Shown here: positions 19,130-41,816 of the stretch, piece by piece
How positions within the stretch are numbered: the stretch's first letter is position 1
Layout of the letters: each line of letters begins with the position of its first letter
DNA from: Mytilus edulis
Lineage: Eukaryota
Assembly (NCBI RefSeq): GCF_963676685.1
Contig: NC_092350.1
Location: forward strand, 75,950,001 to 76,014,000
DNA: 64,000 bases
Direction of reading: 5' to 3'
The notes under the pieces: generated by a model
Told to the model about the DNA's origin: nothing
Seen by the model: the letters and a program-made list of their open reading frames with translations, nothing else
Databases searched by the model: none
Position numbers and translations under genes: made by a program

Positions 19130-19813
19130 AGGGGCACTAGCTACGAGATATATAAAAAACCAAAAGTATGATTTTTTTGTTCAATCATTAATGAAAGTGA
19201 AAAAGTGAAATAATAATTAGCTTTTATCAGCTAAAATGGTTCAATTTTGTAAAATTAACCTAATAAACATTGATAATGACTTATTCACTTGCAAGTGAAT
19301 AATTCGACCTTATTCAACCCGTATTCATGTGAACTCCAATTTAACCCCGTAGAAAGAGATAGAAAAACGCATGCAATGTCCGTGTACGGTTATTAAAAGG
19401 AAAAAATGTAAACATTGAAAGTGAAACAAAGGTAAATAATTTGATTAATTGATTCGATCCACAAAAAGTCATTCTTATAAAGCTAAAAACGACGGTAAAC
19501 ATAGTTTTTGAATCTATAATACAATATAATAGACTTTTAAAAATTCAATTGCACGTGTGGATTAATCTATTCATATCTATGTTTTTTTATGTTTACATCG
19601 TTTATATGGTCATATAAGGTCAACTCGATAGTTAATTAGATGGCGTCTTGGCTAAAATTCTCACGAAACGAAGCTACATCTTTTTGAGACCATGTCCTGT
19701 ACATTGTTTATTTTATACTTTTGATAGTTTGGAAACATATTTTACATTGTTATAAATAAAACATGTGGACTTGAGACAAATCGGTGATCATGAATTTGGC
19801 AGCTAGTGCCCCT
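19130..19813. mobile_element. Kolobok-like MITE, 684 bp, TTAA TSD (mirror copy 44750-45433)
   Basis: TTAA|AGGGGCACTAGCT ... AGCTAGTGCCCCT|TTAA. Confidence 0.85.
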
Positions 19814-21599: not shown

Positions 21600-22120
21600 C
21601 ACAGTAATCAAAAACATTAGTTGATTATCGTTTGGCCAAATATTCAGATGCAGTCGTATTATTCCATTGAGGCAAATACGACGCTATCCATTTCAAAGTT
21701 ACTTCTGTTTTATTTGTCTTTAATATTACATTCAACTCAACTAGAACCATCTATAAATGTATAATATGGCCCGTCTACCAGATGCTAGGACCAGTAAAGG
21801 ATGTACTAAATGACAAAATGTACAGTTTACATAAGTCGTTTGTGTATGATCCAATTATCCATTTATCAACAGTACTAAAAGATTCAATCTATGAAACATT
21901 CAGTATTGAATATGGGGATGCTTCCGCGAATATTAGTGCTTTTACAACAGTAGCCGTGGACAATATTGACAACAACAGGAGTTCAACTACGGCTAACGAA
22001 TCGTCACATATACTCCAATACATTACAAGCCAACACAACTTTTCGTATTATTGCTATAACTTAGTAACTAATATTATTAGTATAGAACAAGATATATATC
22101 CTAGCACTAACCAAATATAA
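21600..22120 (+). mobile_element. Degenerate relic of a large DNA-transposon-like ORF (mirror ~42400-42930)
   Basis: DKMYSLHKSFVYDPIIHLST...FTT(V/A)AVDNIDNNRSSTTANESSH resembles the recalled 'FTTAAVDNIDHNPSSTTAK.SFHG' motif of repetitive marine-invertebrate transposon-like proteins. The frame is broken upstream and downstream. Confidence 0.5.
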
Positions 22121-22703
22121 CCATGCGTTTCATACTTACATCGAGTAATAACCATATTATGGACATGCACTCTGTCAACTGTCTAACCAGAAATACCAAG
22201 TATAATTAGTATCTGGACATCATTCTACGCATATAATCGTGAAAACGCTGTTATTAAAAGGTACCTCAACTGTTTTATAATAGCGCAAGTTTAAACTTAG
22301 TTGATTTACTTGATTAACTGACGTAACAAATGTGTAGGACAATAGTCCAATGTTAGTAAGAAATGAATATGCTTAGATCCTGTAAATTATTTTCAACAAA
22401 AGATTGTGCATTATGATCAGTCAATAATCAGACGGAAAACAAAATAACGGCGGATCGCAAAAATGAAACCTCGCATTGATGCCGAGGTCGTTGAATCACA
22501 ATGATAACAATTACATGCACCCATTTCTAACTTAACAGTAACTAAATTAGTTCATGATCAAGGACAGTACCTTGAAAGAGCTATAAAGTAGAAATAAGTA
22601 AGAAAAACGTATATACTGTTTTTTTTTATTTTTATTTTTATTTTCTGGAACATTTCTACATAATGTTAACTTCAGAGTTCGACATGTTTTCCTCTTCCTT
22701 GAT

Positions 22704-25700
22704 CTAATTTCCCTTATAATATGTTGAATCGACTTGTTTTCTCCAAGTATTTGTTGGACATTTTGTATATGAACATTCTATGTTGTTCCAAGTAACTCTG
22801 TAATATATTAAACGAAATTGTAAATAAGTATACAAATAAAGTAAATAGAGTTCAAACTTAACGTACGAATATATATATAGCTATCTGCACTATCCTTAAT
22901 TCTGATATGTTCACATTCTGTGCCATACTTGAAGTACCTGATATTACTTTGTTTTCTGTGTTTGTTTAATGACATGTTTGGGGAAAGATACTCTTTATAT
23001 ATAAAGTAATACACAGACGAGTTACTTGAAAGGGTGCCGTTTTGATACGTGTGGGTTGCAATTTTGCCAAGTTAAAATATCAATGGGTAATTAACTATTA
23101 TCTTTCGAATATATATTTTTTGTTTACTTGCTGTTTAATCATAAAAGTTTTAAATACAAATTTAGATGTAAAAAATTGAATATGTAATAACTGAGAAATA
23201 TATGAATGGATCATGATTGTGACAATATATTTTTGAATATGTATTAACTGGTTTAAACTGGACGTTAAGCAAGAAACAATCAATCAATCAGTATTACAAC
23301 ACAATATTTGTTCAAATGAAGCAATATGCAACGTTTAAAATATGTAAGTATGTCTGCACATATATGTATATATTTATACTGATAACCAACAAAATTTCAA
23401 GGGCAAGTTATGATCACGTCTTCAGCGAGTAGAAGCAGTACCACGAGTAAATTAAACTTGGATCTTCCCGAAGTTTGTACTAGATAAAGGCAATTGTAGT
23501 ATACCGCTGTTCAATGGTCATAAATCGATTTAACTGAAACAAATCCGGGTCACAAACCAAAACTGAGGGAAACACGTCAACTATAAGAGGAAACAAAACT
23601 GTACACAAAATTTATATAGAGCTATCTGCATTATGTACACATTCAGTGCCATACTTGAAATATCATAGTTAAATCATTTGCTTCAGACTAAGCGGAAATA
23701 ATCAGTTAATTGGAATAGTTCTTTGCCAATTTTTTATCATTCAATATGAATCTAGTTCAATTATAAAACATACGTAAAGATAAAAGTATACAAACCCGCC
23801 ATCTTCACTGTTAAAACCAACGATAACCTTCCCTTTATTAACTCTATACGACCGCCCGTTTGATGTCGCGTCGTCCACTTGTACATCACAATCTCTGTAT
23901 GTGTACTCTATGTCTGCAAAAAAATATTACTTATAACAGCTCAAATATTTATTTGTTCATGTAAACATAACAAGAGCTGAAGATATTTTTTTAGCATATT
24001 TGAACTGTTAATTTAATACAAGAGCTGTTTGTGTATTTTTGAAAATATTACAATCATTACGTTCTCTGTGATGAAACTATTATGAATAACACTAATGTTC
24101 AAATTAGTGCAACTTCTCAGCACTGAAAATGTAAAAGATTTGCGTAATTTGTGTAAATTCTTGTTTAATGCACTTAATCATAGGACCAAACTGTTATTGG
24201 TCAATACTTGATATTTATTTGCTTCTCTGATGTATTATGTCATGTTGTGTTATAGAAATGTATTTGTATTTATTGCACTAATAAGCATAATGTGCTTAAA
24301 GTAATAAAGAATTGAATTGAACACTATACATGATGATACCAAAACATTTTCAGAGGGCCAAAATGGAACTAATTTAGCCACAGAAAAGCTTATCTCAGTT
24401 TTTCTTAAGACAGCAAATAAATCATCCCGAATGGTGAGAAAAAAGAAATACAAAAAGAAAACTGGTTAGATAAAAGAAGTCCGACAAAACGTAAACTGTT
24501 AGAAAAGCTGTTAAAAATGGAGTCTTATTAAGAATTAATTTATGATAAACTCTCAGACTCATCATTAAATAGTCCTTCTGCATTTTACTAAACTCCGTAT
24601 AAGTGATCATGGTCTTGAATTAAAAACTGGTCGGTGCACTAAAATTCTTTGAGAATAAAGACTATGTAAAAATCGAAGATGAATTTCAATTATTCTTAAA
24701 TGCAAAGTAAATACAAATATCAGACAAAACCTATATAATGATATACAATTAGAAGTTGAACATTTCATTCATGAAGACAAATTATTTTATATATTAAACC
24801 CAGATAGATTTATTGGCTTTATAAAAAAGGTCATTATAACTGGGGGGGGGGGGGGGGGGGGGGGGCAGTTGTCTGAAGTAACATGGCTATCTTAAAGAAA
24901 TGACCGTCACGAAATATTCAAATGTGTAGAAAGTATCATTAAGCACAAATCAACCAATCAGTCAAGAAGACATTTGATTATGTTAATTATTCCTGTGCTT
25001 CGTAAAATAATAATAATCCTATGATTTAAGAATTAAATGCTTTTTGTTATCCTATTCTGGTGTAATAGCATTGCTCATAGCCCATTTTATAAATTGGCGG
25101 TACATATCCAACTCTTTTAGAACTTGATAGAATTACAATTCATTCCATTACACCAATATCACATACATGTCATACGTTATACTGTCTACAACAATGACAT
25201 GTTTTTAGTATTACTTACTTTTGTCCTCACAACATCGAACGTTTTGACCAAATCCTTCTAAATATTCCCATCCACTTATATAGCCATATCCAGGACATTT
25301 GAAAGAGTTTTTCAAATTATAAACTACCGGAAAAAAAAGAAGATAGATTGATTAAATCGATACAGAATTGTTTTTTGCATATAAACATTGGCAGGACATA
25401 TGCTTTTTCAAATAGGATTTGTGTTCAGTCCGTAAAACTCATTTTTTTTCAATTATGCGGTTGTTCTTATATGTTTCTTACTGATTATCACAGTGAACTG
25501 ACACGTTTAAATCCGGATTAGTGTATCGGTCTAATACAAAGCATATTCATTTTGCATTAAAATGCTCTCCTTCTGCCTAATTATGCATTTTATAAACTCT
25601 TCATAAATACTAAGATTAAAAGTGTGTATACCGTTTATCAGCTTGGTATATACTATGTAAATGATAAATTAGCTAGTTTGATTTTCACTTCTACGAAACT

Positions 25701-26092
25701 TCAACTGTTGAAAGTTTTTTTTTTTACCTTAATAGTGAAGATATCGTTTAACATGTTTAAGTACCTTACCTTAATAGTGAGAATATCGTTTAAGTACCTT
25801 ACCTTAATAGTGAAGATATCGTTTGAGTACCTTACCTTAATAGTGAGGATATCGTTTAAGTACTTTACATATACTTACATAGAGTTTGGCACACTACGTT
25901 TTTTCCTGGTCCCGGTTTACACGTAAATGGAAACGGATCAGGGAATAGCTTATCAATGGAATCTCCGTCACGACAATACTGCCTATATGTTATTGGTCTC
26001 GATTTCTTTTTATCATTTTGGTAGCTACCAAGGACAGTGGAAGCAATAACGAGTAATATCAAACCTGTAAGTTGTAAACAAAAATATAACAT
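22704..26092 (-). CDS. Secreted Cys-rich, divergent dermatopontin/HAAF-like protein, copy A; exons 26092-25879, 25323-25219, 23913-23796, 22797-22704; 176 aa
   Basis: GT-AG exons of 214+105+118+94 nt with compatible phases 1/1/2, a signal peptide and an upstream TATAAAA. The protein is identical to copy B (one synonymous GGG/GGA difference seen). Confidence 0.75.
24095..24319 (+). mobile_element. LINE 3'-end fragment present only in the left arm
   Basis: MFKLVQLLSTENVKDLRNLCKFLFNAL, then AATAAA and a GAATT tail. Bounded by AACACTA at 24088-24094 and 24320-24326; the right arm has a single AACACTA. Confidence 0.55.
24560..24830 (+). mobile_element. Degenerate LINE ORF2 C-terminal zinc-knuckle relic (mirror ~39920-40190)
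   Basis: FTKLRISDHGLELKTGRCTK..*E*RLCK..IEDEFQLFL matches the RISxHxLxIExGR...RxC...IEDExHF motif, with stops and a frameshift. Confidence 0.65.
25725..25865. repeat. 33-bp tandem repeat (~4 units) in intron 1 of the secreted-protein gene (mirror 38880-39022)
   Basis: Unit taccttaatagtgaagatatcgtttaagtacct. Confidence 0.85.
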
Positions 26093-28200
26093 TTTTTCAC
26101 CAATATTAATACAAAGCATGGACACAATATTTTTATATTTTTACAGTTTTTACGTTACAGCTAAAGTTAATTGATCGATATTATATCATTTTAATGTTTG
26201 CATTTCTACTATCTAATGAACCTTGATCAAAATAATATCATGTAAATTTCTGCATTTCTGCTAACTAATCAACACTATAGATGTCAATTTTTTCTGATAT
26301 GTGGTATTCTAAAGACTCGAAAATGTCAGCCACATATCAAGTATACATATCAAAATGGTAACTTTTTATACTGACAAACTATTTTTGTTGGATGCTACAC
26401 TGCTTTCTGTAGGCAATCTGCATTCCTATGGTTAAACCAAAAGGTAAAATCACAAAAATACTGAACTCCGAGGAAAATTCAAAACGGAAAGTCCCTAATC
26501 ACCCAAATGCATGATTCGAAAACAAACTGATAAAGACATGCCATGGCAAAAAAAAATATACTGAAAAGCGTAGAAAACTAAAGTCGAGCAACCGGATCCA
26601 AACTAATAACCGGAACGATCACAAGTGCTCCGGAAGGCTAAACAGTTCCTGCTCCATATAGAACGACCCACGTGTTACTTCTATGAAACGCGGTAAATTA
26701 TACCAAGAGATAAGGTATCACACAATAGCGAATTACAGTTCAGTATTGGCTATATAATATTAAATGAAAAACAAAGGAGCATACATAAATTTCTGCAAAT
26801 TATGATTACATTGAGCGTTGCCATTAATTAATCTGTTAATGAAATAAATATAAGAACTTTCTATTTTGATAAATTCAGTTGATGTTCAATGCACATAGAA
26901 GAAGTCTATCAAAACATTGTTTTAATATTTATTGAGTTTTCATGAAAACAAATGTTCCATGGAGTATAAAATTTCTCTCATACAAAATTTTTAACAGAAA
27001 CATAAACCTTATCAGTGGAGTTGACTCGTCTTCGAAATAACACGAACGAGACTTACCTTCGCCATAAAACAAAACAAGATGTGAACGTACAGTGGTATGA
27101 GGATATGTGGTCCTAAGCGATGTCATCGCTGTAAACTTTAAATAAAGTACAAAAAAGCAACTTTCATTTTTGTCTAATACGCAAAGTGATTTAGATTTAT
27201 GATTTGTTTTTCTTAATATTATTACCTTTGTAGCTTAAACAAGCCATTGCAAACTGTAAGTAAGTAAGGTAAGTTTCCGTCCTTGAGTAACAAAGTTGTA
27301 GGTTAAGTTATAATGTACTATGGAAATCACCTTGCTTTATATACTTATTCAATTTAAGAAGTTAAAGCCCGTTAATAATGAAACCAAAATTAACAAGAAG
27401 CTATGTTAAATTAACTGAAACCCACCAGAAAGCAATTGAATGCGTCGGTGAACTAACAATATGCATTTGACAAACTGAAAATCGTTGATCTTGAAATTGG
27501 AATTGAATTCACGCCGAAAGATAGAAAACACATAAGTTAACACACAATATCAAACTATTGTCGACGAACCAGTACACAATAATTAGAAAGACAACACGAG
27601 CCATTAACAGGAAAAACTACTACAAACAAGAATAAAAAGTGTGTTAGTGAGGGTGTATAGAAAACTACTTTCCGTGAGAATGTTTTAAAATGTTTAAAAA
27701 AGAGCAAGGGGTAATAAAAACATAAGCTCAAGAAAATCAAAACGCACTACATTAAACAAAAGTAGACGTATAACATTTAACAAATTAGCCGGATCTGAGA
27801 CTGGAACGGGTTGTGCAGGAGAGGAAAGCAGTTTTTTTTTTATCTTTTGGTCGTTTGTAAAGGATAACTGAAAAAGTCGCATTAATGATTTCATATTTTT
27901 TAATTACTTAACAATTTGCAAGAATGATTGATAACGAAATATTGATATCCATTCAAGTACGTATGAAATCATTTTATAAACAATTCATTTAAAAAATACC
28001 TAGTGCTTTTCTATTACCATCTTTTAACTACCATTAACCTCTCTAAAACTTAATTTGATATTTTTAAAGTTAGTTTTTAAATGTTTTAAGAAACTAAGAT
28101 ACTATCTCCGTTTGACGAAGTTGACCTTACCATACGTCATTTTGCATATGGCCGTTCGGTCAGGGTTTTCCCTGGGTATTGAAGTATTCATAGATGTTGA

Positions 28201-28570
28201 GGATGTACTTAGTTGAGGTTTAGACATGTATTTCAGATGGTCAGACTCCTGGGTCAAAGCATGTTAAACCGTTATGCTTAATAACACTAATTTTTCTTAT
28301 CATATATGAAATTTATAGCTCAAAAAGGGTCATTTACCAAATTTTAAGCAGATTCTTGATTTCATTTCTTTCAATTTGAGACCCTTATAAAACCAATGCA
28401 AATATAAGGTTAAAGTCAAAGACAGTCTGCTTCCGCCAATTGTTTAAAATTAAATATCTCGAAAAGGAGCTGCAAAAACTATCAATATTTTGAGCTTATG
28501 CTTATGATTTTCCGACTTATTGTATCTATCTTAAAATCTGTTTTTTTCTTAATTTCCCTTAAGTACATCC
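28201..28570. mobile_element. Kolobok-like MITE (mirror 36160-36531)
   Basis: TTGA|GGATGTACTTA ... TAAGTACATCC|TTAA. Confidence 0.6.
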
Positions 28571-31121
28571 TTAAGCTTTAAAATGTTTGTAATTCCCTTA
28601 CATCTTCTGAAATTTCGTTTGAATGGAGTGGCTCAATTTTATCTTTTTTATTTGTGCTTCTTTTAATTGTTTCACTTTATGTTGAATTTTTTGTTATGGC
28701 ATTGTCTATTTAATATGAATTAAGGTTTCGGGTACCTTTGTTTTCTCATATTACTCTTTGTGTATGTACAGCGTCAATGCATCGTTTAAATTATAATAAT
28801 ATCGATTCACTGACTTGTTACGAGTTAGAACACTTCTCATAACATGTCCAATTGACTCGGAATCTTATTGCATAGGGTTGTCAGTGTTCGCGCTTAAGGC
28901 TGGTTTTTCCGAAAGTAGTATGACATGTATGACTTCCTTCATATAAAAAAAGAACCGTAAGGATAAAGCCAAGAGTATTGAAAATTGTCTGAACTACCTA
29001 CAATCAATCAATCAAATCACATGAACTGTTTACGCAAAGGTATTTTGATTTTAAAAATTTAAACCGGAAAAAAGGACTTCAAAGTGCATGTATTGTTCAA
29101 GTTGCATATACCAATGATAACAAATATATATATATATATTAATGTTACTCCTGCAAACATTATTTTTCTTTTCTCGTTCAAACTTTTTGAAAATTGTTAA
29201 TAATGATATGAATATAGAATATAGAATAAGGAGATGTGGAATGATTGCAAATGGGACAATGCCGACTTTAATCATTTGATTTATTTGCATACGATATATA
29301 GCTTATCATGTGTTTAAACTATTAGTCTTTCTGATAAATTATAAGATATGACTAAACTATTAGTCTTTCTGATAAATTATAAGATACGACTAAACATATC
29401 TGGTCTTTGTTTATTTTAATTTTAGTTTCTTGTACAATTTGGAAATTAGTATGGCGTTCATTATCACTGATGATAACTGGTTCTTTATTTCCGTGATTGG
29501 ACTATCATTTACCTGTAAGAAACCATTATTTTACCTTTAGCTGTCCAATATGTTTTAAGAATTGCCCTCTTCTTTCTTAAAAATATTTGACAGCTGTAAG
29601 GTAGCATGACTGATTCCTACAGGTAAATGATAGTTCAATCACTGAAATAAAAAAAAAACACTATTAATTACCCTAATTGTTTTCATCAAGTAAAGAAAAA
29701 TACAACTAAAGAACAAATGACAATTAAAAACAACATTGTATTAAAGTCAACTCCCAATACAATAATTTTGTCACTCATCAAAACGGTCTCTTGAGGGAAA
29801 AAAACTTTCAATTGATTTTTAACACTACCAATACTTATATCACAGAAATTTTTCTTATGTTTTGGGTTGTCTCTTTTCGCACTAATTCAATAAGTTGATT
29901 ATGGTCGTTGTAAGTCTTGTTTTTTTCCCTTTGTGAATTTCTTTTTTTTTTTAAGATTTAACCTCGTCCGTCTTTCTCTTTCTTCGTTCTTGCACTAACA
30001 ATATACTTTAATCACTTTATACATTTTGAAACACAAAACACATGTAAAGATTTTCACGGATACTATGAGCGGAAAATATGATAAGTCCTTGTGCACGTGC
30101 AAATCATGATACGCATACCCTGTGTAGTATTCTTCATGTAGCAGTACCTGTTTTTTAGTTGAGCTACTGTTTAAAGGGGCCAATTGCAACATGTAGGATA
30201 AATTTTAATGTAAAGAAGTTTATTTACAAAACAATTTTCCTACTTGATGAAATTATATCTTTGCTTGCTGTTTCTTTTGTTTTACTTTTTTCGACGTGTT
30301 AAACAATGTTTTAAGTAAGATATAAGCCTCTAACAGTCGATTCTGTAAAATATTAAACAAATATTTTACAGAATGGACTGTTGTCGGCTTATATACCTGA
30401 CATAATAGTCAAACATAATATTAATCTGGTTGTTTTTTAAATTACAGTCACCTTATCTCATTTAATTACATAAACTTTCCTTCACCCCCTGATGTTGAAC
30501 ATGTATGTTCTGTTCTATAAGTAGGTACGTAGGTGCCCATATTCACAAATTTGCACCATCCTGGGATCAATTATCAAACAAATTATTTCTGTATTATGGT
30601 TTTGAGTGTTTTGTAAATATCTTACAGAAACCAACTCTTTGAATTAGAATATTTTAGTAGCACTTGATAAAACTAATAATTTTATCTAAATCAAGGACAC
30701 ACTATTACATTTCTCCAATAGCCAGTGATGTTTATTGTTCGTTCTAAAAATCAATTACTATATGAAACAAAATATAAAGTATTTCTAACGACATTTGATA
30801 TGAACAGGGGTAATGGGATTTTGATTTATTTAACATTTTGTATATTATTTTTGGAAGCACCTGCTGCTGCTTTTTGTTATGTATCATTAATTAATACAAG
30901 CGATTAATTTCTATTTTTGCAATTTAAGATTACAAAACCTTGTCCTACATTCTCGTTTTAGCTTACATAGTTGTAAATTAACATGCTTGAAATTGTTTTT
31001 CTTTAAGTAATAGCCTTATGACGATGATTTTTTTCATATGTTTTTTAGTAAACTACATGTAATGATGGTAAGAAACAGAAAAATGAAAACATCTAATAAA
31101 TAAAATGATCGAAATATTATT

Positions 31122-31362
31122 AATAAAATTGAGAATGGAAATGGAGAATGTGCCAAAGAGACAACAACCCGACCATAGAAAAAAACAACAGCAGAAGGTC
31201 ACCAACAGGTCTTCAATGTAGCGAGAAATTCCCGCACCCGGAGGCGTTCTTCAACTGGCCCCTAAACAAATATATACTAGTTCAGTGATAATGAACGCCA
31301 TACTAATTTCCAAATTGTACACAAGAAACTAAAATCAAAATAATACAAGACTAACAAAGACC
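31122..31362 (+). mobile_element. Dispersed non-autonomous (Helitron-like) repeat; other copies at ~52350-52633 and 56519-56790
   Basis: Shared sequence ataaaattgagaatggaaatgg..aaagagacaacaacccgacc..cccgcacccggaggcgt..agtgataatgaacgccatactaatttcc. The class assignment is inference. Confidence 0.75.
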
Positions 31363-31617
31363 AGATATGTTTAGTCGTATCTTATAATTTATCCGAAAGA
31401 CTAATAGTTAAGTCATATCTTATATTTAATCAGAAAGACTAATAGTTTAAACACATGATAAGCTATATATCGTATGCAAATAAATCAAATGATTAAAGTC
31501 GGCATTGTCCCATTTGCAATCATCCACATCTCCTTAATCTATATTCATATCATTATTAACAATTTTCAAAAAGTTTGAACGAGAAAAGAAAAATAATGTT
31601 TGCAGGAGTAACATTAT

Positions 31618-31678
<61 letters not shown>

Positions 31679-31760
31679 TTGCCTAACAATGTAATTTTAA
31701 CACACTATTTAGTATGTAAATATAAGAATGTTTAAAATATTTACAAAATGATGAAAATAA

Positions 31761-31799
31761 ACGCAATATTTCGCTAGACCAACTAGCTTTATCAAGCGT
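31761..31799 (-). ncRNA. Mirror copy of the minimal hammerhead ribozyme motif
   Basis: Exact reverse complement of 34488-34526. Confidence 0.7.
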
Positions 31800-32073
31800 G
31801 CATCTATCCAGGTGAAATCGGATGTAGATGATAAGAAACTTTTGCAGCTCAACGTCTGTGTTGCACTGAACTGCCTTCAAAATAAGAAAATTTTGCAGCT
31901 CAATGTATATGACCTCTTGCATTTAGCTGCTTTGAAAATAAGAAAATTTTGCAGCTCAATGTACATGTTGCACTTGGATTTAGCTACCTTAAAAAATACA
32001 TAATTGGTAGTCGAAGTTAGCAACGTCCATTGGCCAATATTACGGGATAAAAAGGACGATGCTTTGTTTTAAA

Positions 32074-33054
32074 TTATTCTTTATCTTTCCTGTATCTTTT
32101 TTCGTCTTTTTCGTTAAGACCATCAGGTTCTAAAGTGTGGAGTTGGTGGATCCAAAAGTTTTCTCTTCTCCTTCTCGCCGTGGTGTCCCATTCGGTGTTG
32201 ACTTCTATAATTTGGAAAGTGACATTATCAAAAGGATGTTTCGTTGAACGAAGATGTCTTGTGAGAGGACAGTTTTTGTTGGTTTTGTACGATGAACGAT
32301 GGTTATTGAGCCGAATATTAAATTTGTCCATTGTTTCTCCCACATACTGAATGCCACAAGTGTCACATGTTAATATATAAATTGAGTTCTCCGTTTTACA
32401 GTTGGAATTAGAGTAGATGGTATAATTTTGTTTAGTAACGGAGCTGATGAAAGAACTGCTTGTATTGGCAGCTTTACAACACAAACAATTCCTTCGACCA
32501 CATTGTTTGTAGCAACCGGGCGATGGATTAGGCTGCTTGGTTAATACAGATGTCACTAATTTGTCACGGATGTTTTTAGGTCTTCTGAAGGCCATGACTG
32601 GTGGTGAAGAAAATACTTTTTTTAGATTTAAATCATTTTCTATAATTTTCCAATGCTTATGAACAATGGATGACACATTTTTAAAATCAGGATGGTAAGT
32701 GAGTACAAGGGGTGTTCTGTTAGCTGCTTTATTCTTATCTTTGTACTCAAGAAGTTCTTGGCGACTAGTTTTGTTTGCTCTTTCGAAAGCGCTATCAATA
32801 ATGTTGTTATTGTATCCTCGAACAACTAGATGTTTACGAAGTTGTCCAAGTCTAGCATTTTTCGTATTTTCAGTAGAGCATATTCTCTTGATTCGCAATG
32901 CCTGGCTGAATGGGATACCACGGGAGCAGTGTTTAGGATGGCAACTTTTAGGAGAAAGGAATTGATGTTTGTCCGTTTGTTTGGTATGAAGGTCCGTTAT
33001 AATGGTTCCGTTCTTGATGTAACTCGTAGTATCGAGGAAGTTTATTTTCTCCAT
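32074..33054 (-). CDS. PLE RT-thumb + Cys linker + GIY-YIG endonuclease ORF (326 aa), left arm
   Basis: INFLDT..DLHTKQTDKHQFL..SCHPKH..GIPFSQALRIKRICS; CGRRNCLCC; SIYILTCDTCGIQYVGET..RLNNHR..RRRRENFWIHQLHTLEPDGLN. Confidence 0.88.
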   Translation of the reverse strand: MEKINFLDTTSYIKNGTIITDLHTKQTDKHQFLSPKSCHPKHCSRGIPFSQALRIKRICSTENTKNARLGQLRKHLVVRGYNNNIIDSAFERANKTSRQELLEYKDKNKAANRTPLVLTYHPDFKNVSSIVHKHWKIIENDLNLKKVFSSPPVMAFRRPKNIRDKLVTSVLTKQPNPSPGCYKQCGRRNCLCCKAANTSSSFISSVTKQNYTIYSNSNCKTENSIYILTCDTCGIQYVGETMDKFNIRLNNHRSSYKTNKNCPLTRHLRSTKHPFDNVTFQIIEVNTEWDTTARRRRENFWIHQLHTLEPDGLNEKDEKRYRKDKE

Positions 33055-33143
33055 AGATGATTCATATGTAAATTTTATTGAATGGTGGAAAGAGTTGCAG
33101 TGTTCTAGAAATTCATTAAGATGTTCTTGTGAATCTGTCCATT

Positions 33144-34214
33144 AAATGGACAGATTCACAAGAACATCTTAATGAATTTCTAGAACACTGCAACTCTTTC
33201 CACCATTCAATAAAATTTACATATGAATCATCTATGGAGAAAATAAACTTCCTCGATACTACGAGTTACATCAAGAACGGAACCATTATAACGGACCTTC
33301 ATACCAAACAAACGGACAAACATCAATTCCTTTCTCCTAAAAGTTGCCATCCTAAACACTGCTCCCGTGGTATCCCATTCAGCCAGGCATTGCGAATCAA
33401 GAGAATATGCTCTACTGAAAATACGAAAAATGCTAGACTTGGACAACTTCGTAAACATCTAGTTGTTCGAGGATACAATAACAACATTATTGATAGCGCT
33501 TTCGAAAGAGCAAACAAAACTAGTCGCCAAGAACTTCTTGAGTACAAAGATAAGAATAAAGCAGCTAACAGAACACCCCTTGTACTCACTTACCATCCTG
33601 ATTTTAAAAATGTGTCATCCATTGTTCATAAGCATTGGAAAATTATAGAAAATGATTTAAATCTAAAAAAAGTATTTTCTTCACCACCAGTCATGGCCTT
33701 CAGAAGACCTAAAAACATCCGTGACAAATTAGTGACATCTGTATTAACCAAGCAGCCTAATCCATCGCCCGGTTGCTACAAACAATGTGGTCGAAGGAAT
33801 TGTTTGTGTTGTAAAGCTGCCAATACAAGCAGTTCTTTCATCAGCTCCGTTACTAAACAAAATTATACCATCTACTCTAATTCCAACTGTAAAACGGAGA
33901 ACTCAATTTATATATTAACATGTGACACTTGTGGCATTCAGTATGTGGGAGAAACAATGGACAAATTTAATATTCGGCTCAATAACCATCGTTCATCGTA
34001 CAAAACCAACAAAAACTGTCCTCTCACAAGACATCTTCGTTCAACGAAACATCCTTTTGATAATGTCACTTTCCAAATTATAGAAGTCAACACCGAATGG
34101 GACACCACGGCGAGAAGGAGAAGAGAAAACTTTTGGATCCACCAACTCCACACTTTAGAACCTGATGGTCTTAACGAAAAAGACGAAAAAAGATACAGGA
34201 AAGATAAAGAATAA
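33144..34214 (+). CDS. PLE polyprotein C-terminal part (RT downstream of the catalytic DD, thumb, GIY-YIG endonuclease); first Met at 33234
   Basis: Uninterrupted frame KWTDSQEHLNEFLEHCNSFHHSIKFTYESSMEKINFLD... to stop 34214. The ORF-track N-terminus (33129-33143) is only the mirrored arm. Confidence 0.88.
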   Translation, partial: KWTDSQEHLNEFLEHCNSFHHSIKFTYESSMEKINFLDTTSYIKNGTIITDLHTKQTDKHQFLSPKSCHPKHCSRGIPFSQALRIKRICSTENTKNARLGQLRKHLVVRGYNNNIIDSAFERANKTSRQELLEYKDKNKAANRTPLVLTYHPDFKNVSSIVHKHWKIIENDLNLKKVFSSPPVMAFRRPKNIRDKLVTSVLTKQPNPSPGCYKQCGRRNCLCCKAANTSSSFISSVTKQNYTIYSNSNCKTENSIYILTCDTCGIQYVGETMDKFNIRLNNHRSSYKTNKNCPLTRHLRSTKHPFDNVTFQIIEVNTEWDTTARRRRENFWIHQLHTLEPDGLNEKDEKRYRKDKE

Positions 34215-34701
34215 TTTAAAACAAAGCATCGTCCTTTTTATCCCGTAATATTGGCCAATGGACGTTGCTAACTTCGACTACCAATTATGTATTTTTTAAG
34301 GTAGCTAAATCCAAGTGCAACATGTACATTGAGCTGCAAAATTTTCTTATTTTCAAAGCAGCTAAATGCAAGAGGTCATATACATTGAGCTGCAAAATTT
34401 TCTTATTTGAAGGCAGTTCAGTGCAACACAGACGTTGAGCTGCAAAAGTTTCTTATCATCTACATCCGATTTCACCTGGATAGATGCACGCTTGATAAAG
34501 CTAGTTGGTCTAGCGAAATATTGCGTTTATTTTCATCATTTTGTAAATATTTTAAACATTCTTATATTTACATACTAAATAGTGTGTTAAAATTACATTG
34601 TTAGGCAATCTATAATTTTATTTGTGTAATTGAATTAATCTCTGTACTGATTAATCCACACTCGTATAGATTTGTATGTCATGTGCTGCTATTTATAGGC
34701 A

Positions 34702-34703
<2 letters not shown>
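33145..34703 (+). mobile_element. Penelope-like element (Neptune-type), 5'-truncated, right hairpin arm with the longer 3' end
   Basis: ORF, then a 3' region with three ~60-bp imperfect repeats and a hammerhead motif, ending at (TA)n 34704-34751. Confidence 0.92.
34488..34526 (+). ncRNA. Minimal type-I hammerhead ribozyme motif, variant U3/A8 core
   Basis: Stem I ACGC, core TTGATAA plus an extra A, stem II GCTAG-ttggt-CTAGC, GAAA, palindromic mini stem III (ATAT), T17, stem I' GCGT. It lies in the PLE 3' region where such motifs are expected. Confidence 0.7.
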
Positions 34704-34751
<48 letters not shown>

Positions 34752-34753
<2 letters not shown>

Positions 34754-35139
34754 ACTCGTCTAAACATCAACCCAACAATGTTAGATCTGTAAATTTGCTT
34801 TCGCAAATTTTTGGTTCTTCCCTCGCCGGGATTCGAACCCATGCTACTGTGATATCGTGATACCAAATCGCCTGCACTGCAGCCGTCCCGCTAGACCACA
34901 CGACCACCTAGGCTCTCATAAAAAGAGCTTTCGCTGGCCGTGTGTTACCTTTCCACGTCAGTTTTAATCTAGCGGCGTACTACAGTACATGATATATAAG
35001 GCATGAAGATGTTATTGTTACAGATCAGCTAAATTATCTATAGTAAAGGATCCTACAAATTAATGTAATATACAGTCACAGAAAATAATTATATTTATAA
35101 GTACGTCTGAGTCAGTGACAACTCTACAACAGATGTATC
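34752..35139 (-). mobile_element. (TA)n-flanked repeat with a tRNA-derived core (34818-34913)
   Basis: The minus strand reads GCCTAGGTGGTCGTGTGGTCTAGCG...GGGTTCGAATCCCGGCGAGGG with Pol III A and B boxes but no proper cloverleaf. (TA)n lies on both sides, and the element is absent from the left arm. Confidence 0.7.
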
Positions 35140-38100
35140 TATATATATATATTTTTTATCATTGGTATATGCAACTTGAACAATACAGGCACTTTGAAGT
35201 CCTTTTTTCCGGTTTAAATTTTTAAAATGAAAATACCTTTGCGTAAACAGTATTTTATCTATTCACATTCAAGGTTTTGGAAAATGTTTGATACTGATTT
35301 CAATACAAAATAAGGAGATATGGAATGACTGCAGATTATACAATTTTCAAGCATCCTTCAAATGAAGTGGATTTAAGAAAATATAAGTCACTTCATTACC
35401 TTCGACAATGACTAAAACTCATACCATTCAGTCAACTATAAATGTTTCAACAGGACAAAATCATTTTTACAATTCCAGCGAAAATAACAATGGCTTGATG
35501 CATGACACACAATAAAAAACACAATTATTACAGACGGCAACCAACACCAATGATTGAATCACAGACATATTTTTATATATAATTAGTCTTGCTTTGGCGT
35601 GTTAAGTGAACCTAGCCCTCAAATAACCTGGGACATAGAATTGATAACACAACATAAGAATAAACTGACAACATGGTCCATGTCCAACACTTATGTTCAT
35701 GTGATTTGATTGATTGATTGTAGGTAGTTCAGACAATTTTCAATACTCTTGGCTTTATCCTTACGGTTCTTTTCTTTATATGAAGGAAGTCATACATGTC
35801 ATACTACTTTCGGAAAAACCAGCCTTAGGCGCGAACAATGACAACCCTATTCAATAAGATTCCGAGTCAATTGGACATGTTATGAGACGTGTTCTAACTC
35901 GTAACAAGTCAGTGAATCGATATTATTATAATTTAAACGATGCATTGACGCTGTACATACACAAAGAGTAATATGAGAAAACAAAGGTACCCGAAACCTA
36001 AATTCATATTAAATAGACAATGCCATAACAAAAAATTCAACATAAAGTGAAACAATTAAAAGAAGCACAAATAAAAAATATAAAATTGAGCCACTCCATT
36101 CAAACGAAATTTCATAAGATGTAAGGGGAAGTCACAATAACAAACATTTTAAAGCTTAAGGATGTACTTAAGGGAAATTAAGAAAAAAAAACAGATTTTA
36201 AGATAGATACAATAAGTCGGAAAATCATAAGCATAAGCTCAAAATATTGATAGTTTTTGCAGTTCCTTTTCGAGATATTTAATTTTAAACAATTGGCGGA
36301 AGCAGACTGTCTTTGACTTTAACCTTATATTTGCATTGGTTTTATAAGGGTCTCAAATTGAAAGAAATGAAATCAAGAATCTGCTTAAAATTTGGTAAAT
36401 GACCCTTTTTGAGCTATAAATTTCATATATGATAAGAAAAATTAGTGTTATTAAGCAAAACGGTTTAACATGCTTTGACCAAGGAGTCTGACCATCTGAA
36501 ATACATGTATAAACCTCAACTAAGTACATCCTCAACATCTATGAATACTTCAATACCCAGGGAAAACCCTGACCGAACGGCCATATGCAAAATGACGTAT
36601 GGCAAGGTCAACTTCGTCAAACGGAGATAGTATCTTAGTTTCTTAAAACATTTAAAAACTAACTTTAAAAATATCAAATTAAGTTTTAGAGAGGTAAATG
36701 GTAGTTAAAAGATGGTAATAGAAAAGCACTAGGTATTTTTTAAATGAATTGTTTATAAAATGATTTCATACGTACTTGAATGGATATCAATATTTCGTTA
36801 TTAATCATTCTTGCAAATTGTTAAGTAATTAAAAAAATATGAAATCATTAATGCGACTTTTTCAGTTATCATTTACAAACGACCAAAAGATAAAAAAAAA
36901 AAACTGCTTTCCTCTCCTGCACAACCCGTTCCAGTCTCAGATCCGGCTAATTTGTTAAATGTTATACGTCTACTTTTGTTTAATGTAGTGCGTTTTGATT
37001 TTCTTGAGCTTATGTTTTTATTACCCCTTGCTCTTTTTTAAACATTTTAAAACATTCTCACGGAAAGTAGTTTTCTATACACCCTCACTAACACACTTGT
37101 TATTCTTGTTTGTAGTAGTTTTTCCTGTTAATGGCTCGTGTTGTCCGATTTCTAATTATTGTGTACTGGTTCGTCGACAATAGTTTGATATTGTGTGTTA
37201 ACTTATGTGTTTTCTATCTTTCGGCGTGAATTCAATTCCAATTTCAAGATCAACGATTTTCAGTTTGTCAAATTCATATTGTTAGTTCACCGACGCATTC
37301 AATTGCTTTCTGGTGGGTTTCAGTTAATTTAACATAGCTTCTTGTTAATTTTGGTTTCATTATTAACGGGCTTTAACGTCTTAAATTGAATAAGTATATA
37401 AAGCAAGGTGATTTCCATAGTACATTATAACTTAACCTACAACTTTGTTACTCAAGGACGGAAACTTACCTTACTTACTTACAGTTTGCAATGGCTTGTT
37501 TAAGCTACAAAGGTAATAATATTAAGAAAAACAAATCATAAATCTAAATCACTTTGCGTATTAGACAAAAATGAAAGTTGCTTTTTTGTACTTTATTTAA
37601 AGTTTACGGCGATGACATCGCTTAGGACCACATATCCTCATACCACTGTACGTTCACATCTTGTTTTGTTTTATGGCGAAGGTAAGTCTCGTTCGTGTTA
37701 TTTCGAAGACGAGTCAACTCCACTGATAAGGTTTATGTTTCTGTTAAAAATTTTGTGTGAGAGAAATTTTATACTTCATGGAACATTTGTTTTCATGAAA
37801 ACTCAATAAATATTAAAACAATGTTTTGAAAGACTTCTTCTATGTGCATTGAACATCAACTGAATTTATCAAAATAGAAAGTTCTTATATTTATTTCATT
37901 AACAGATTAATTAATGGCAACGCTCAATGTAATCATAATTTGCAGAAATTTATGTATTCTCCTTTGTTTTTCATTTAATATTATATAGCCAATACTGAAC
38001 TGTAATTCGCTATTGTGTGATACCTTATCTCTTGGTATAGTTTACCGCGTTTCATAGAAGTAACACGTGGGTCGTTCTATATGGAGCAGGAACTGTTTAG

Positions 38101-38653
38101 CCTTCCGGAGCACTTGTGATCGTTCCGGTTATTAGTTTGGATCCGGTTGCTCGACTTTAGTTTGCTACGCTTTTCCGTATTTTTTTTTTTGCCATGGCAT
38201 GTCTTTATCAGTTTGTTTTCGAATCATGCATTTGGGTGATTAGGGACTTTCCGTTTTGAATTTTCCTCGGAGTTCAGTATTTTTGTGATTTTACTTTTTG
38301 GTTTAACCATAGGAATGCAGATTGCCTACAGAAAGCAATGTAGCATCCAACAAAAATAGTTTGTCAGTATAAAAAGTTACCATTTTGATATGTATACTTG
38401 ATATGTGGCTGACATTTTCGAGTCTTTAGAATACCACATATCAGAAAAAATTGACATCTATAGTGTTGATTAGTTAGCAGAAATGCAGAAATTTACATGA
38501 TATTATTTTGATCAAGGTTCATTAGATAGTAGAAATGCAAACATTAAAATGATATAATATCGATCAATTAACTTTAGCTGTAACGTAAAAACTGTAAAAA
38601 TATAAAAATATAAAAATATTGTGTCCATGCTTTGTATTAATATTGGTGAAAAA

Positions 38654-41600
38654 ATGTTATATTTTTGTTTACAACTTACAGGTTTGATATTACTCGTTAT
38701 TGCTTCCACTGTCCTTGGTAGCTACCAAAATGATAAAAAGAAATCGAGACCAATAACATATAGGCAGTATTGTCGTGACGGAGATTCCATTGATAAGCTA
38801 TTCCCTGATCCGTTTCCATTTACGTGTAAACCGGGACCAGGAAAAAACGTAGTGTGCCAAACTCTATGTAAGTATATGTAAAGTACTTAAACGATATCCT
38901 CACTATTAAGGTAAGGTACTCAAACGATATCTTCACTATTAAGGTAAGGTACTTAAACGATATTCTCACTATTAAGGTAAGGTACTTAAACATGTTAAAC
39001 GATATCTTCACTATTAAGGTAAAAAAAAACAACTTTCAACAGTTGAAGTTTCGTAGAAGTGAAAATCAAACTAGCTAATTTATCATTTACATAGTATATA
39101 CCAAGCTGATAAACGGTATACACACTTTTAATCTTAGTATTTATGATGAGTTTATAAAATGCATAATTACATTTTAATGCAAAATGAATATGCTTTGTAT
39201 TAGACCGATACACTAATCCGGATTTAAACGTGTCAGTTCACTGTGATAATCAGTAAGAAACATATAAGAACAACCGCATAATTGAAAAAAAATGAGTTTT
39301 ACGGACTGAACACAAATCCTATTTGAAAAAGCATATGTCCTGTCAATGTTTATATGCAAAAAACAATTCTGTATCGATTTAATCAATCTATCTTCTTTTT
39401 TTCCCGGTAGTTTATAATTTGAAAAACTCTTTCAAATGTCCTGGATATGGCTATATAAGTGGATGGGAATATTTAGAAGGATTTGGTCAAAACGTTCGAT
39501 GTTGTGAGGACAAAAGTAAGTAATACTAAAAACATGTCATTGTTGTAGACAGTATAACGTATGACATGTATGTGATATTGGTGTAATGGAATGAATTGTA
39601 ATTCTATCAAGTTCTAAAAGCGTTGGATATGTACCGCCAATTTATAAAATGGGCTATGAGCAATGCTTTTACACCAGAATAAGATAACAAAAAGCATTTA
39701 ATTCTTAAATCATAGGATTATTATTATTTTACGAAACACAGGAATAATTAACATAATCAAATGTCTTCTTGACTGATTGGTTGATTTGCGCTTAATGCTA
39801 CTTTCTACACATTTGAATATTTCGTGACGGTCATTTCTGTAAGATAGCCATGTTACTTCAGACAACTGCCCACATGTATCCCCCCTCCCCCCCCCCCCCC
39901 CCCCCCCCAGTTATAATGACCTTTTTTATAAAGCCAATAAATCTATCGGGGTTTAATATATAAAATAATTTGTCTTCATGAATGAAATGTTCAACTTCTA
40001 ATTGTATATCATTATATAGGTTTTGTCTGATATTTGTATTTACTTTGCATTTAAGAATAATTGAAATTCATCTTCGATTTTACATAGTCTTTATTCTCAA
40101 AGAATTTTAGTGCACCGACCAGTTTTTAATTCAAGACCATGATCACTTATACGGAGTTTAGTAAAATGCAGAAGGACTATTTAATGATGAGTCTGAGAGT
40201 TTATCATAAATTAATTCTTAATAAGACTCCATTTTTAACAGCTTTTCTAACAGTTTACGTTTTGTCGGACTTCTTTTATCTAACCAGTTTTCTTTTTTTA
40301 TTTCTTTTTTCTCACCATTCGGGATGATTTATTTGCTGTCTTAAGAAAAACTGAGATAAGCTTTTCTGTGGCTAAATTAGTTCCATTTTGGCCCTCTGAA
40401 AATGTTTTGGTATCATCATGTATAGTGTTATTCATAATAGTTTCATCACAGAGAACGTAATGATTGTAATATTTTCAAAAATACACAAACAGCTCTTGTA
40501 TTAAATTAACAGTTCAAATATGCTAAAAAAAATATCTTCAGCTCTTGTTATGTTTACATGAACAAATAAATATTTGAGCTGTTATAAGTAATATTTTTTG
40601 CAGACATAGAGTACACATACAGAGATTGTGATGTACAAGTGGACGACGCGACATCAAACGGGCGGTCGTATAGAGTTAATAAAGGAAAGGTTATCGTTGG
40701 TTTTAACAGTGAAGATGGCGGGTTTGTATACTTTTATCTTTACACATGTTTTATAATTGAACTAGATTCATATTGAATGATAAAAAATTGGCAAAGAACT
40801 ATTCCAATTAACTGATTATTTCCGCTTAGTCTGAAGCAAATGATTTTACTATGATATTTCAAGTATGGCACTGAATGTGTACATAATGCAGATAGCTCTA
40901 TATAAATTTTGTGTACAGTTTTGTTTCCTCTTATAGTTGACGTGTTTCCCTCAGTTTTGGTTTGTGACCCGGATTTGTTTCAGTTAAATCGATTTATGAC
41001 CATTGAACAGCGGTATACTACAATTGCCTTTATCTAGTACAAACTTCGGGAAGATCCAAGTTTAATTTACTCGTGGTACTGCTTCTACTCGCTGAAGACG
41101 TGATCATAACTTGCCCTTGAAATTTTGTTGGTTAGCAGTATAAATATATACATATATGTGCAGACATACTTACATATTTTAAACGTTGCATGTTGCTTCA
41201 TTTGAACAAATATTGTGTTGTAATACTGATTGATTGATTGTTTCTTGCTTAACGTCCAGTTTAAACCAGTTAATACATATTCAAAAATATATTGTCACAA
41301 TCATGATCCATTCATATATTTCTCAGTTATTACATATTCAATTTTTTACATCTAAATTTGTATTTAAAACTTTTATGATAAAACAGCAAGTAAACAAAAA
41401 ATATATATTCGAAAGATAATAGTTAATTACCCATTGATATTTTAACTTGGCAAAATTGCAACCCACACGTATCAAAACGGCACCCTTTCAAGTAACTCGT
41501 CTGTGTATTACTTTATATATAAAGAGTATCTTTCCCCATACATGTCATTAAACAAACACAGAAAACAAAGTAATATCAGGTACTTCAAGTATGGCACAGA

Positions 41601-41816
41601 ATGTGAACATATCAGAATTAAGGATAGTGCAGATAGATATATATATATTCGTACGTTAAGTTTGAATTCTATTTACTTTATTTGTATACTTATTTACAAT
41701 AATTTCGTTTAATATATTACAGAGTTACTTGGAACAACATAGAATGTTCATATACAAAATGTCCAACAAATACTTGGAGAAAACAAGTCGATTCAACATA
41801 TTATAAGGGAAATTAG
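38654..41816 (+). CDS. Secreted Cys-rich, divergent dermatopontin/HAAF-like protein, copy B; exons 38654-38867, 39411-39515, 40604-40721, 41723-41816; 176 aa
   Basis: MLYFCLQLTGLILLVIASTVLG-SYQNDKKKSRPITYRQYCRDGDSIDKLFPDPFPFTCKPGPGKNVVCQTL|FYNLKNSFKCPGYGYISGWEYLEGFGQNVRCCEDK|NIEYTYRDCDVQVDDATSNGRSYRVNKGKVIVGFNSEDG|GVTWNNIECSYTKCPTNTWRKQVDSTYYKGN*. TATAAAA at ~38601-38616 and an AATAAA cluster at ~41878-41895. Confidence 0.75.

What the first reader, a model, noticed from the sequence alone, without database searches (positions are those of the whole stretch)
31621..34751. Near-perfect 2.9-kb fold-back Penelope insertion in a (TA)n site, with the empty site preserved next door
Seen: 31673-33143 and 33145-34614 are reverse complements around a single unpaired A (33144), with only one 1-bp indel noticed. 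The two 5'-truncated copies are joined head-to-head, and both 3' ends point outward into (TA)n. The right arm runs ~90 bp further (to 34703). The left arm stops exactly at an internal TATA (mirror of 34611-34614) that is microhomologous to the target. The other duplication arm shows the pre-insertion site as a bare (AT)8 at 29124-29139. Known: Neptune-type PLEs (Cys linker plus GIY-YIG) often sit in microsatellites, and PLEs can carry inverted terminal segments. Inference: first-strand cDNA primed at (TA)n stalled just downstream of the RT catalytic codons, snapped back, copied itself and rejoined the target through TATA. This differs from L1 twin priming, where the inverted part is upstream sequence rather than a duplicate. 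Any read-through transcript would form ~1.47 kb of dsRNA, a ready source of silencing small RNA.
Basis: partly seen in the sequence, partly recalled or inferred. Interest (0 to 1): 0.85.

Follow-up and report, generated by a model that had tools for sequence, protein, structure and literature searches.

The report
Perfect palindromic Penelope-like retroelement insertion
A young Penelope-like retrotransposon sits in a (TA)n tract as two identical, head-to-head, 5'-truncated copies; this two-armed layout is already known for these elements and is the norm for this family, so the case is a clean example, not a new kind of thing.

Summary
Window 31673-33143 and 33145-34614 are reverse complements around one base (33144), with no substitutions and one 1-bp homopolymer indel. 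The right arm carries 89 extra bases, and both ends lie in (TA)n.

[quoted passage not shown] The family is young and has about 900-1270 candidate places in this 1.37-Gb genome.

The interpretation needs correcting:
- **Left-arm stop.** It is not a local TATA rejoining. In every informative two-armed copy sampled, one arm ends at that position (ref 3237) and the other carries the 89-nt tail (ref 3326). Solo copies also end at 3237, so it is a genuine reverse-transcription start site.
- **Prior knowledge.** Inverted 5'-truncated copies, a tail at one end only and (TA)n targeting are published hallmarks of these elements.
- **Other palindromes.** Two more perfect palindromes exist in the family (arms 3294 and 2264 nt).
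- **Fold centre.** A 0-1-nt centre argues against an intramolecular snap-back. It favours two cDNAs, primed from both target strands, joined end to end.
- **Empty site.** It also lacks a 388-bp SINE-like repeat, whose (TA)n tail was the likely target.

The read data could not test the fold.

The parts
31621..31672 (.). Left (TA)26 tract flanking the tail-less end
31673..33143 (-). Left arm: element positions 1767-3237 of the 3326-bp natural reference copy, ending at the family's tail-less terminus
   Evidence: 99.9% to reference copy
33144..33144 (+). Centre base A. It matches reference position 1766, so it belongs to the right arm (or is a non-templated A).
33145..34614 (+). Right arm body: element positions 1767-3237, mirror of the left arm
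34615..34703 (+). 89-nt 'tail' (reference 3238-3326), present on one arm only
   Evidence: tail concept in PMC8557442 and PMC11167929
34704..34751 (.). Right (TA)24 tract, continuous with the (TA)n tail of the adjacent SINE-like repeat
33144..34214 (+). Open frame for the RT C-terminal part, the Cys linker (C-x4-C-x2-C) and the GIY-YIG endonuclease. The same frame is mirrored at 32074-33143 on the minus strand.
34314..34456 (+). Three ~56-nt direct repeats in the 3' UTR (mirrored at 31831-31974)
31876..31879 (.). The only arm-to-arm difference: A4 here against A3 at 34406-34408. The left arm has the length seen in the reference copy.
34752..35139 (-). 388-bp very high-copy, expressed SINE-like repeat with tRNA-like box motifs. 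Its 3' end faces the (TA)n tract, and it is absent from the empty site.
   Evidence: ARAGORN finds no tRNA
35140..35152 (.). Remnant (TA)6 of the original target at the far side of the SINE-like repeat
29124..29139 (.). Unoccupied (AT)8 site in the paralogous (or allelic) arm, lacking both the palindrome and the SINE-like repeat

Best explanation
This is a genuine, very recent insertion of a canonical endonuclease-bearing Penelope-like element (PLE) into a long (TA)n tract, probably the tail of a SINE-like repeat. It has the two-armed, head-to-head architecture that is the norm for this family.

Inferred mechanism: the element's GIY-YIG endonuclease cut both strands of the (TA)n target, and each 3'-OH primed reverse transcription. 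One primed at the tail-less start site (ref 3237, next to an internal UAUA). The other primed 89 nt downstream (ref 3326, also followed by UAUA in tandem transcripts). Both cDNAs were copied from the same RNA, or from identically ended RNAs. They stopped at the same template position (1766/1767), 12 nt past the FIDD codons. They were then joined end to end, most simply by a template jump of one cDNA onto the 3' end of the other. This gives a spacerless palindrome with a tail on one side only.

Shown: the anatomy, the family-wide pairing of ends, the identity of the arms and the target. Inferred: the priming from both strands, the single template and the template jump.
For: - **Anatomy.**
- **Element identity.** A 3326-bp natural copy has one 929-codon open frame. 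[quoted passage not shown]
- **Pairing of ends.** In 15 two-armed loci with sequence, one arm ends at ref 3237 and the other at ref 3326. A 16th locus approximates this. Four more loci fit by coordinates. No locus has two tails or two tail-less ends.
- **3237 is a start site.** Solo copies end at 3237 with their own flanks or a target-site duplication.
- **Other symmetric folds.** L031 has 3294-nt arms and a 0-nt centre on a native GTAC, where both arms include 58 nt of upstream tail. L035 has 2264-nt arms and an 11-nt loop. L038 has a 65-nt stem and a 16-nt loop.
- **Arm identity.** There are 0 substitutions in 6941 nt of the three symmetric loci. The 14 asymmetric loci have 67 in 13,292 nt, and 60 of those 67 are private to one arm. 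The arms were therefore identical at birth.
- **Target.** Every sampled insertion lies in (TA)n.
- **Published in vitro work.** A PLE protein cleaves and extends both target strands and starts at two adjacent RNA sites that define the tail (PMC11167929).
Against: - No read or contig could be shown to span the fold, so the palindrome rests on the assembly alone.
- In the published in vitro system the two start sites were used equally on both strands, which does not predict the strict one-of-each pairing seen here.
- Use of a single RNA by two enzymes is conjecture.
- The 11- and 16-nt loops at L035 and L038 would also fit a snap-back.
- The sample is about 20 loci out of roughly 900-1270 candidate places. 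It was chosen by similarity to the query.
Confidence: 0.6

Rival explanations
1. A single first-strand cDNA primed at (TA)n stalled after the RT catalytic codons. It snapped back on itself, copied itself, and rejoined the target through the internal TATA.
For: The symmetry is perfect. Near-symmetric folds with 11- and 16-nt loops occur elsewhere in the family. Near-symmetry (17 nt or less) is seen in 3 of the 15 other two-armed loci, with a permutation p of about 0.017. Arkhipova et al. 2013 inferred self-priming from palindromes at head-to-head junctions (PMC3846280).
Against: With a 0-1-nt centre, the templating base would sit directly next to the primer end on the same strand, which is sterically impossible for an intramolecular primer. 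The primer end has no base pairing. The native ATTTCAAAT mini-palindrome is centred 1 nt away and predicts a different junction. The 3237 end is also used as a 3' terminus by solo copies. A self-copy model also cannot produce the loci in which the tailed arm is the shorter one.
Confidence: 0.2
2. The symmetry arose after insertion, at the DNA level. An ordinary insertion, solo or asymmetric two-armed, became a perfect palindrome by fold-back replication template switching, or by hairpin capping and processing. Alternatively, arm-to-arm gene conversion keeps old palindromes identical.
For: Symmetric loci have identical arms and asymmetric ones have diverged arms. That pattern would also follow from efficient conversion in spacerless palindromes. 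L035 has 16 variants shared by both arms that are not seen in other sampled copies.
Against: The outer ends obey the family's tailed plus tail-less rule exactly, which points to the integration reaction itself. L035 has relatives at 97-99% identity, so it can simply be a young copy of a second subfamily. Host processing usually removes palindrome centres rather than creating them (general knowledge).
Confidence: 0.12
3. The fold is an assembly artefact, for example a fold-back chimeric long read built into the contig.
For: The arms are identical. No listed contig or read bridges 33144. The region lies inside a larger inverted duplication that could itself be a mis-join of haplotypes.
Against: The two outer ends differ, and they are the family's two canonical termini. 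The flanks are distinct and are joined in the empty site. The arms differ by one indel, so they were not simply copied from each other. Two other perfect palindromes have the same end rule. One older near-symmetric fold has diverged arms (5 substitutions), which a chimeric read cannot explain.
Confidence: 0.07

Closest known systems
Canonical EN+ Penelope-like element insertion architecture: inverted 5'-truncated copy, pseudo-LTR and one-sided tail (Craig et al. 2021 PMC8557442; Arkhipova et al. 2013 PMC3846280)
   Same: Single ORF with RT and C-terminal GIY-YIG. Heavy 5' truncation. Partial tandems. An inverted 5'-truncated copy placed head to head. An extension present at one end only. Insertion into AT-rich or (TA)n sequence. 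A Cys linker of the Neptune/Nematis type.
   Different: The tail is 89 nt rather than 30-40. No hammerhead ribozyme was detected by Rfam. Here both arms are truncated at the same nucleotide, which gives kb-scale perfect palindromes with a 0-1-nt centre. The pairing of tailed and tail-less ends was without exception in the sample.
In vitro target-primed reverse transcription by the Anolis PLE PAc (Frangieh et al. 2024, PMC11167929)
   Same: Both target strands are cleaved and extended. Reverse transcription starts at two adjacent sites whose interval equals the genomic tail. The target is AT-rich.
   Different: In PAc the start sites are internal, non-homologous to the target, and used alike on both strands. 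Here both start sites abut UAUA, which can pair with (TA)n ends, and the genomic copies always combine one of each.
L1 twin priming (Ostertag and Kazazian 2001; from general knowledge)
   Same: The second target strand also primes on the RNA, which yields an inverted segment joined head to head.
   Different: In twin priming the inverted part is upstream sequence that does not overlap the 3' part. Here both arms start at the 3' region and duplicate each other.
End-to-end template jumping by non-LTR retroelement reverse transcriptases (e.g. PMC8857657, title seen; R2 biochemistry from general knowledge)
   Same: It joins a finished cDNA to the 3' end of another nucleic acid without homology, sometimes with one extra nucleotide.
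   Different: This activity has not been shown for any PLE enzyme. The acceptor proposed here is a second cDNA, not an RNA.

Membership tests
Penelope-like elements, endonuclease-bearing (canonical, C-terminal EN) | Single ORF with a reverse transcriptase domain | tested here: met
   The natural full-length copy L034:2300-5625(-) has a 929-codon open frame. Pfam RVT_1 hits it at E 2e-12. The RFIDDI motif lies just upstream of the fold.
Penelope-like elements, endonuclease-bearing (canonical, C-terminal EN) | GIY-YIG endonuclease at the C-terminus | tested here: met
   Pfam PF01541 hits at E 8e-07 in the window arm and at E 1e-05 in the full-length copy, residues 817-898 of 919.
Penelope-like elements, endonuclease-bearing (canonical, C-terminal EN) | Partial tandems (pseudo-LTRs) and adjacent inverted 5'-truncated copies | tested here: met
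   L034 holds a tandem. Full-length arms are preceded by 54-680 nt of the 3' end in L031-L033 and L036. Seventeen two-armed loci were found.
Penelope-like elements, endonuclease-bearing (canonical, C-terminal EN) | [quoted passage not shown] | tested here: met
   An 89-nt tail (ref 3238-3326) sits on exactly one arm in 15 loci with sequence, and approximately so in a 16th. Four more loci fit by coordinates. It is longer than the published 30-40 bp.
Penelope-like elements, endonuclease-bearing (canonical, C-terminal EN) | Hammerhead ribozyme motif in the pseudo-LTR | tested here: not met
   No Rfam hammerhead family matched at E<=1 in window 28000-37000 or in the tandem copy L034. None matched at E<=10 in the 3' UTR plus tail. 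A variant-core candidate noted by another reader (s1-836280) was not evaluated. Some PLE clades lack canonical hammerheads (PMC8557442).
Penelope-like elements, endonuclease-bearing (canonical, C-terminal EN) | RT groups phylogenetically with PLE and telomerase RTs | not tested
   No phylogeny was built.
Neptune/Nematis-type PLEs | Extra CX2-5CxxC Cys motif upstream of GIY-YIG, and two Cys inside the GIY-YIG core | tested here: met
   By inspection of the translation. C-GRRN-C-LC-C precedes the endonuclease, and the core reads IY-ILTCDTC-GIQ-YVG.
Neptune/Nematis-type PLEs | Placement in that clade by RT/EN phylogeny | not tested
   No tree was built and no named relatives were retrieved.
L1-type twin-priming inversion | The inverted segment is upstream element sequence that does not overlap the direct 3' segment | tested here: not met
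   Both arms cover the same interval, ref 1767-3237.

The most novel reading that the evidence does not exclude
Spacerless perfect palindromes may be the primary product of PLE integration. In this reading, one ribonucleoprotein primes from both cut target strands at the two adjacent start sites of a single RNA. The two cDNAs run to the same template end and are fused by an end-to-end template jump. The asymmetric inverted copies seen in all PLE-bearing genomes would then be later decay products of such palindromes.
Probability: 0.25. Interest if true: 0.6.

Novelty: new member of a known kind. Interest (0 to 1): 0.35.

Why it matters
The integration cycle of Penelope-like elements is still largely undefined. 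Their tandem and inverted products are the main clue, and also the main obstacle to annotating them.

A young family offers natural end products that constrain any model. Its features are a strict pairing of a tailed and a tail-less arm, arms that were identical at birth, and 0-1-nt palindrome centres. Together these suggest that both target strands prime and that the arms are joined between two molecules.

In practice, kb-scale perfect palindromes are hard to assemble, are expected to be fragile, and could yield double-stranded RNA if transcribed. None of this changes the classification: it is an ordinary member of a known class, in an unusually clean state.

Tried and rejected
- **Reads.** The first attempt found the tool busy. 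The second laid three DNA runs, kept only as k=31 contigs, and one RNA raw-read run. The contigs break at (TA)n and inside the multicopy element, and no listed piece bridges 33144. The test is therefore inconclusive in both directions.
- **Wider census.** Later loci were judged by coordinates only.
- **Hammerhead ribozyme.** Rfam gave no hit.
- **microRNA hits at 33091-33199.** These are a trivial consequence of the hairpin and were rejected.
- **Native palindrome at the fold.** There is only a 4-nt AT inverted repeat centred 1 nt away. It predicts a different junction, so it was rejected as the cause.
- **tRNA in the adjacent repeat.** ARAGORN finds none.
- **Recurrent truncation at ref 1766.** Neighbouring truncations lie at 1757, 1780 and 1850, but none at 1766, so there is no hot spot.
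- **Palindrome copied as a unit.** Every locus has a different junction, so this was rejected.
- **Consensus.** None was built. A natural copy served as the coordinate reference, and only allele counts were compared.
Full report
**Observation.** The repeat finder reports arms 31880-33143 and 33145-34408, 1264 nt, 100% complementary and separated by one base. A global alignment outward from the fold extends the match to 31673 and 34614 with no substitution. The only difference is a 1-bp indel in an A run at 31876-31879. To the left of 31673 lies (TA)26. The right arm continues for 89 more bases of non-repeat sequence to 34703 and then meets (TA)24.

**What the arms are.** The frame that runs from the fold to 34214 encodes the C-terminal part of a reverse transcriptase, a Cys-rich linker (C-x4-C-x2-C) and a GIY-YIG endonuclease. 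The window's own assembly is 1.37 Gb in 2368 contigs. Searches of it returned about 900-1270 candidate places depending on the query, with the best copies 95-100% identical. A tandem pair on another contig gives a natural full-length unit of 3326 bp with one 929-codon open frame. [quoted passage not shown] I used this natural copy only as a coordinate ruler. On it, the left arm is 1767-3237 and the right arm is 1766-3326. The fold is 4 codons past RFIDDI. This is a canonical endonuclease-bearing Penelope-like element with a Neptune/Nematis-type linker. Clade placement by phylogeny was not done. No Rfam hammerhead was found in the window, in the tandem copy or in the 3' UTR.

**Family architecture.** I mapped 50 fetched loci to the ruler. 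Seventeen are two-armed, head to head, with 3' ends outward.
- In 15 of them one arm ends exactly at 3237 and the other at 3326.
- One further locus approximates this (3226/3299), and one has a damaged arm.
- Four further loci fit by coordinates alone.
- No locus has two tailed or two tail-less ends.
- Solo copies also end at 3237 with their own flanks. One has a TATACTA target duplication.

Position 3237 is therefore a regular 3' terminus of the family, that is, a reverse-transcription start site. Both termini are followed by TATA in the template (3234-3237, and positions 1-4 after 3326 in tandem copies). They could therefore pair with (TA)n primer ends. That last step is inference.

**Fold positions and arm identity.** Most two-armed loci are asymmetric, for example 2355|1893 or 416|2850. 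Four are symmetric or nearly so:

| Locus | Arm or stem length | Centre or loop |
|---|---|---|
| Window | 1470 nt | 1 nt |
| L031 | 3294 nt | 0 nt, on a native GTAC |
| L035 | 2264 nt | 11 nt |
| L038 | 65 nt | 16 nt, followed by a 460-bp gap in one arm |

In L031 both arms are full length plus 58 nt of upstream tail, which suggests a common RNA 5' end. Leaving the window out, 3 of 15 loci have arm starts within 17 nt of each other. Label permutation reaches this in 1.7% of trials.

The three long symmetric loci show 0 substitutions in 6941 shared positions. The 14 asymmetric loci show 67 in 13,292. In 60 of those 67, one arm carries a base not seen in any other sampled copy. The arms were therefore identical at birth and diverged afterwards, and the asymmetric loci are older. 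L035 belongs to a second subfamily about 4% from the ruler, with relatives at 97-99%. Its identical arms therefore need not imply gene conversion.

**Target and surroundings.** Every sampled insertion lies in (TA)n. Seven of 17 abut the (TA)n tail of one SINE-like repeat. In the window that repeat is 34752-35139 on the minus strand, with its 3' end toward the palindrome. It is extremely abundant in DNA contigs and well represented in RNA.

The window holds a larger inverted duplication, 17588-29470 against 31282-46975, at about 97.8% identity. Its left arm carries the unoccupied site: flank, (AT)8, flank. Compared with it, the right arm has gained both the SINE-like repeat and the palindrome. 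The likely order is repeat first, then the element into the repeat's (TA)n tail. I could not decide whether the 12-kb arms are paralogues or two haplotypes joined by the assembler. Either way the site without the insertion exists.

**Reads.** Twenty runs under four organism labels (A-D), plus invertebrate- and fish-gut metagenome runs, hold part or all of the stretch. Nineteen of them hold half or more of its sampled words. Three DNA runs and one RNA run were laid (after a busy reply). The DNA runs are k=31 contigs that stop at (TA)n and fragment inside the multicopy element. The unique flanks are present, but no listed piece bridges 33144. The loose ends at 33144 are simply other copies that continue upstream. 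RNA depth over the element is at most about 4 per bin. The fold is thus neither confirmed nor refuted by reads.

The argument for authenticity is structural:
- the outer ends are the family's two canonical termini and differ from each other;
- the flanks are distinct and are joined at the empty site;
- the arms differ by one indel;
- the same design recurs at two other perfect palindromes;
- an older near-symmetric fold has diverged arms.

**Mechanism.** Published work already describes inverted 5'-truncated copies, a tail at one end only and (TA)n preference (PMC8557442). It has proposed self-priming from palindromes at head-to-head junctions (PMC3846280). It has also shown in vitro that a PLE protein cuts and extends both target strands and starts at two adjacent RNA sites whose interval is the tail (PMC11167929).

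My best reading follows from these and the data above. Both 3' ends of the cut (TA)n target primed cDNA, one at each start site. Both cDNAs ended at the same template nucleotide, and they were fused end to end.

The 0-1-nt centres matter here. In an intramolecular snap-back the templating base would be the direct neighbour of the primer end on the same strand, which a polymerase cannot use. There is also no pairing at the would-be primer end. The native ATTTCAAAT next to the fold predicts a junction that is not the one observed. Two separate cDNAs ending at 1766 and 1767 reproduce the observed junction exactly. At L031, two ends finishing in the self-complementary GTAC could pair with each other.

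Use of one RNA by two enzymes would explain identical arms, equal end points and one-of-each start sites, but it is conjecture. The snap-back model remains possible for the loci with 11-16-nt loops. A later DNA-level origin and an assembly artefact are less likely but not excluded.

**Comparison and verdict.** The thing works like, and is a member of, the canonical endonuclease-bearing PLEs. It is not an L1-type twin-priming product, because the arms duplicate each other. Its local explanation of the left end and its intramolecular snap-back are not favoured, and its sense of novelty is too high, because the architecture is textbook for this class.

What is modestly new:
- kb-scale palindromes with 0-1-nt centres;
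- pairing of tailed and tail-less ends without exception in the sample;
- the link between symmetry and zero arm divergence.

Interest is moderate to low overall. It would be somewhat higher for people working on the PLE integration mechanism.

**Limits.** The census covers about 20 loci chosen by similarity to the query. No further genome sequence could be fetched. No long reads or small-RNA data were available. The organism was not identified. I only infer that it is an animal, from the element class and the run labels.

Noticed in passing
window 17588-29470 and 31282-46975: There is a large inverted duplication with arms of about 11.9 kb at about 97.8% identity and a central stretch of about 1.8 kb. 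The palindrome sits in its right arm. It could be a true palindromic segmental duplication or two haplotypes joined by the assembler.
   Followed up: partly
window 34752-35139: This is a 388-bp SINE-like repeat with tRNA-like box motifs and a (TA)n 3' tail. It is very high copy (contig depth about 2 million against about 100 for unique flanks) and abundant in RNA reads. Seven of 17 sampled PLE insertions sit in the tail of this repeat family. Because it ends in (TA)n and inserts into (TA)n, it might itself depend on a (TA)n-targeting enzyme such as this PLE.
   Followed up: partly
window 31121-31365 (also 56520-56762): Another very high-copy, transcribed repeat. Many reads begin or end at 31121-31124 and 31365.
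   Followed up: no
L045:2624-2661 and L008:86-125: The same 30-nt piece (ref 3208-3237) lies inverted, tail to tail, 8-10 bp from the tail-less 3' end at two unrelated loci. It may be an abortive second priming event or a 3'-terminal hairpin of the template.
   Followed up: no
L031:5662-5777, L033:5007-5060, L036:3571-3678: Full-length arms start 54-108 nt upstream of position 1, inside the tail of a preceding unit, at ref 3269, 3269, 3273 and 3219. This suggests that transcripts begin in the tail, so the tail would hold the promoter or the RNA 5' end.
   Followed up: partly
G000:C1, about 24.3-27.7 Mb (coordinates): At least six copies share the same internal structure (pieces 165-355 and 351-1766 of the ruler) at 92-97% identity. 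This looks like a segmental or tandem amplification of one rearranged copy rather than separate insertions.
   Followed up: no
G000:C11:32674280-32681586: An array of at least four same-strand partial copies, each with a short (about 123-nt) opposite-strand piece. It is a tandemly repeated complex PLE unit.
   Followed up: no
window 34488-34526 (mirror in the left arm): Another first-reader note proposes a variant-core minimal hammerhead here. Rfam gives no hammerhead hit even at E<=10 on the 3' UTR. The stem-loop GCTAG-TTGGT-CTAGC followed by GAAA is present by eye.
   Followed up: partly
runs X1-X20: Nearly all exact 31-mers of the element occur in DNA runs under four organism labels, and in gut-metagenome RNA runs of an invertebrate and of fish. 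The family is therefore shared almost unchanged among close relatives, or the labels cover one species complex.
   Followed up: no
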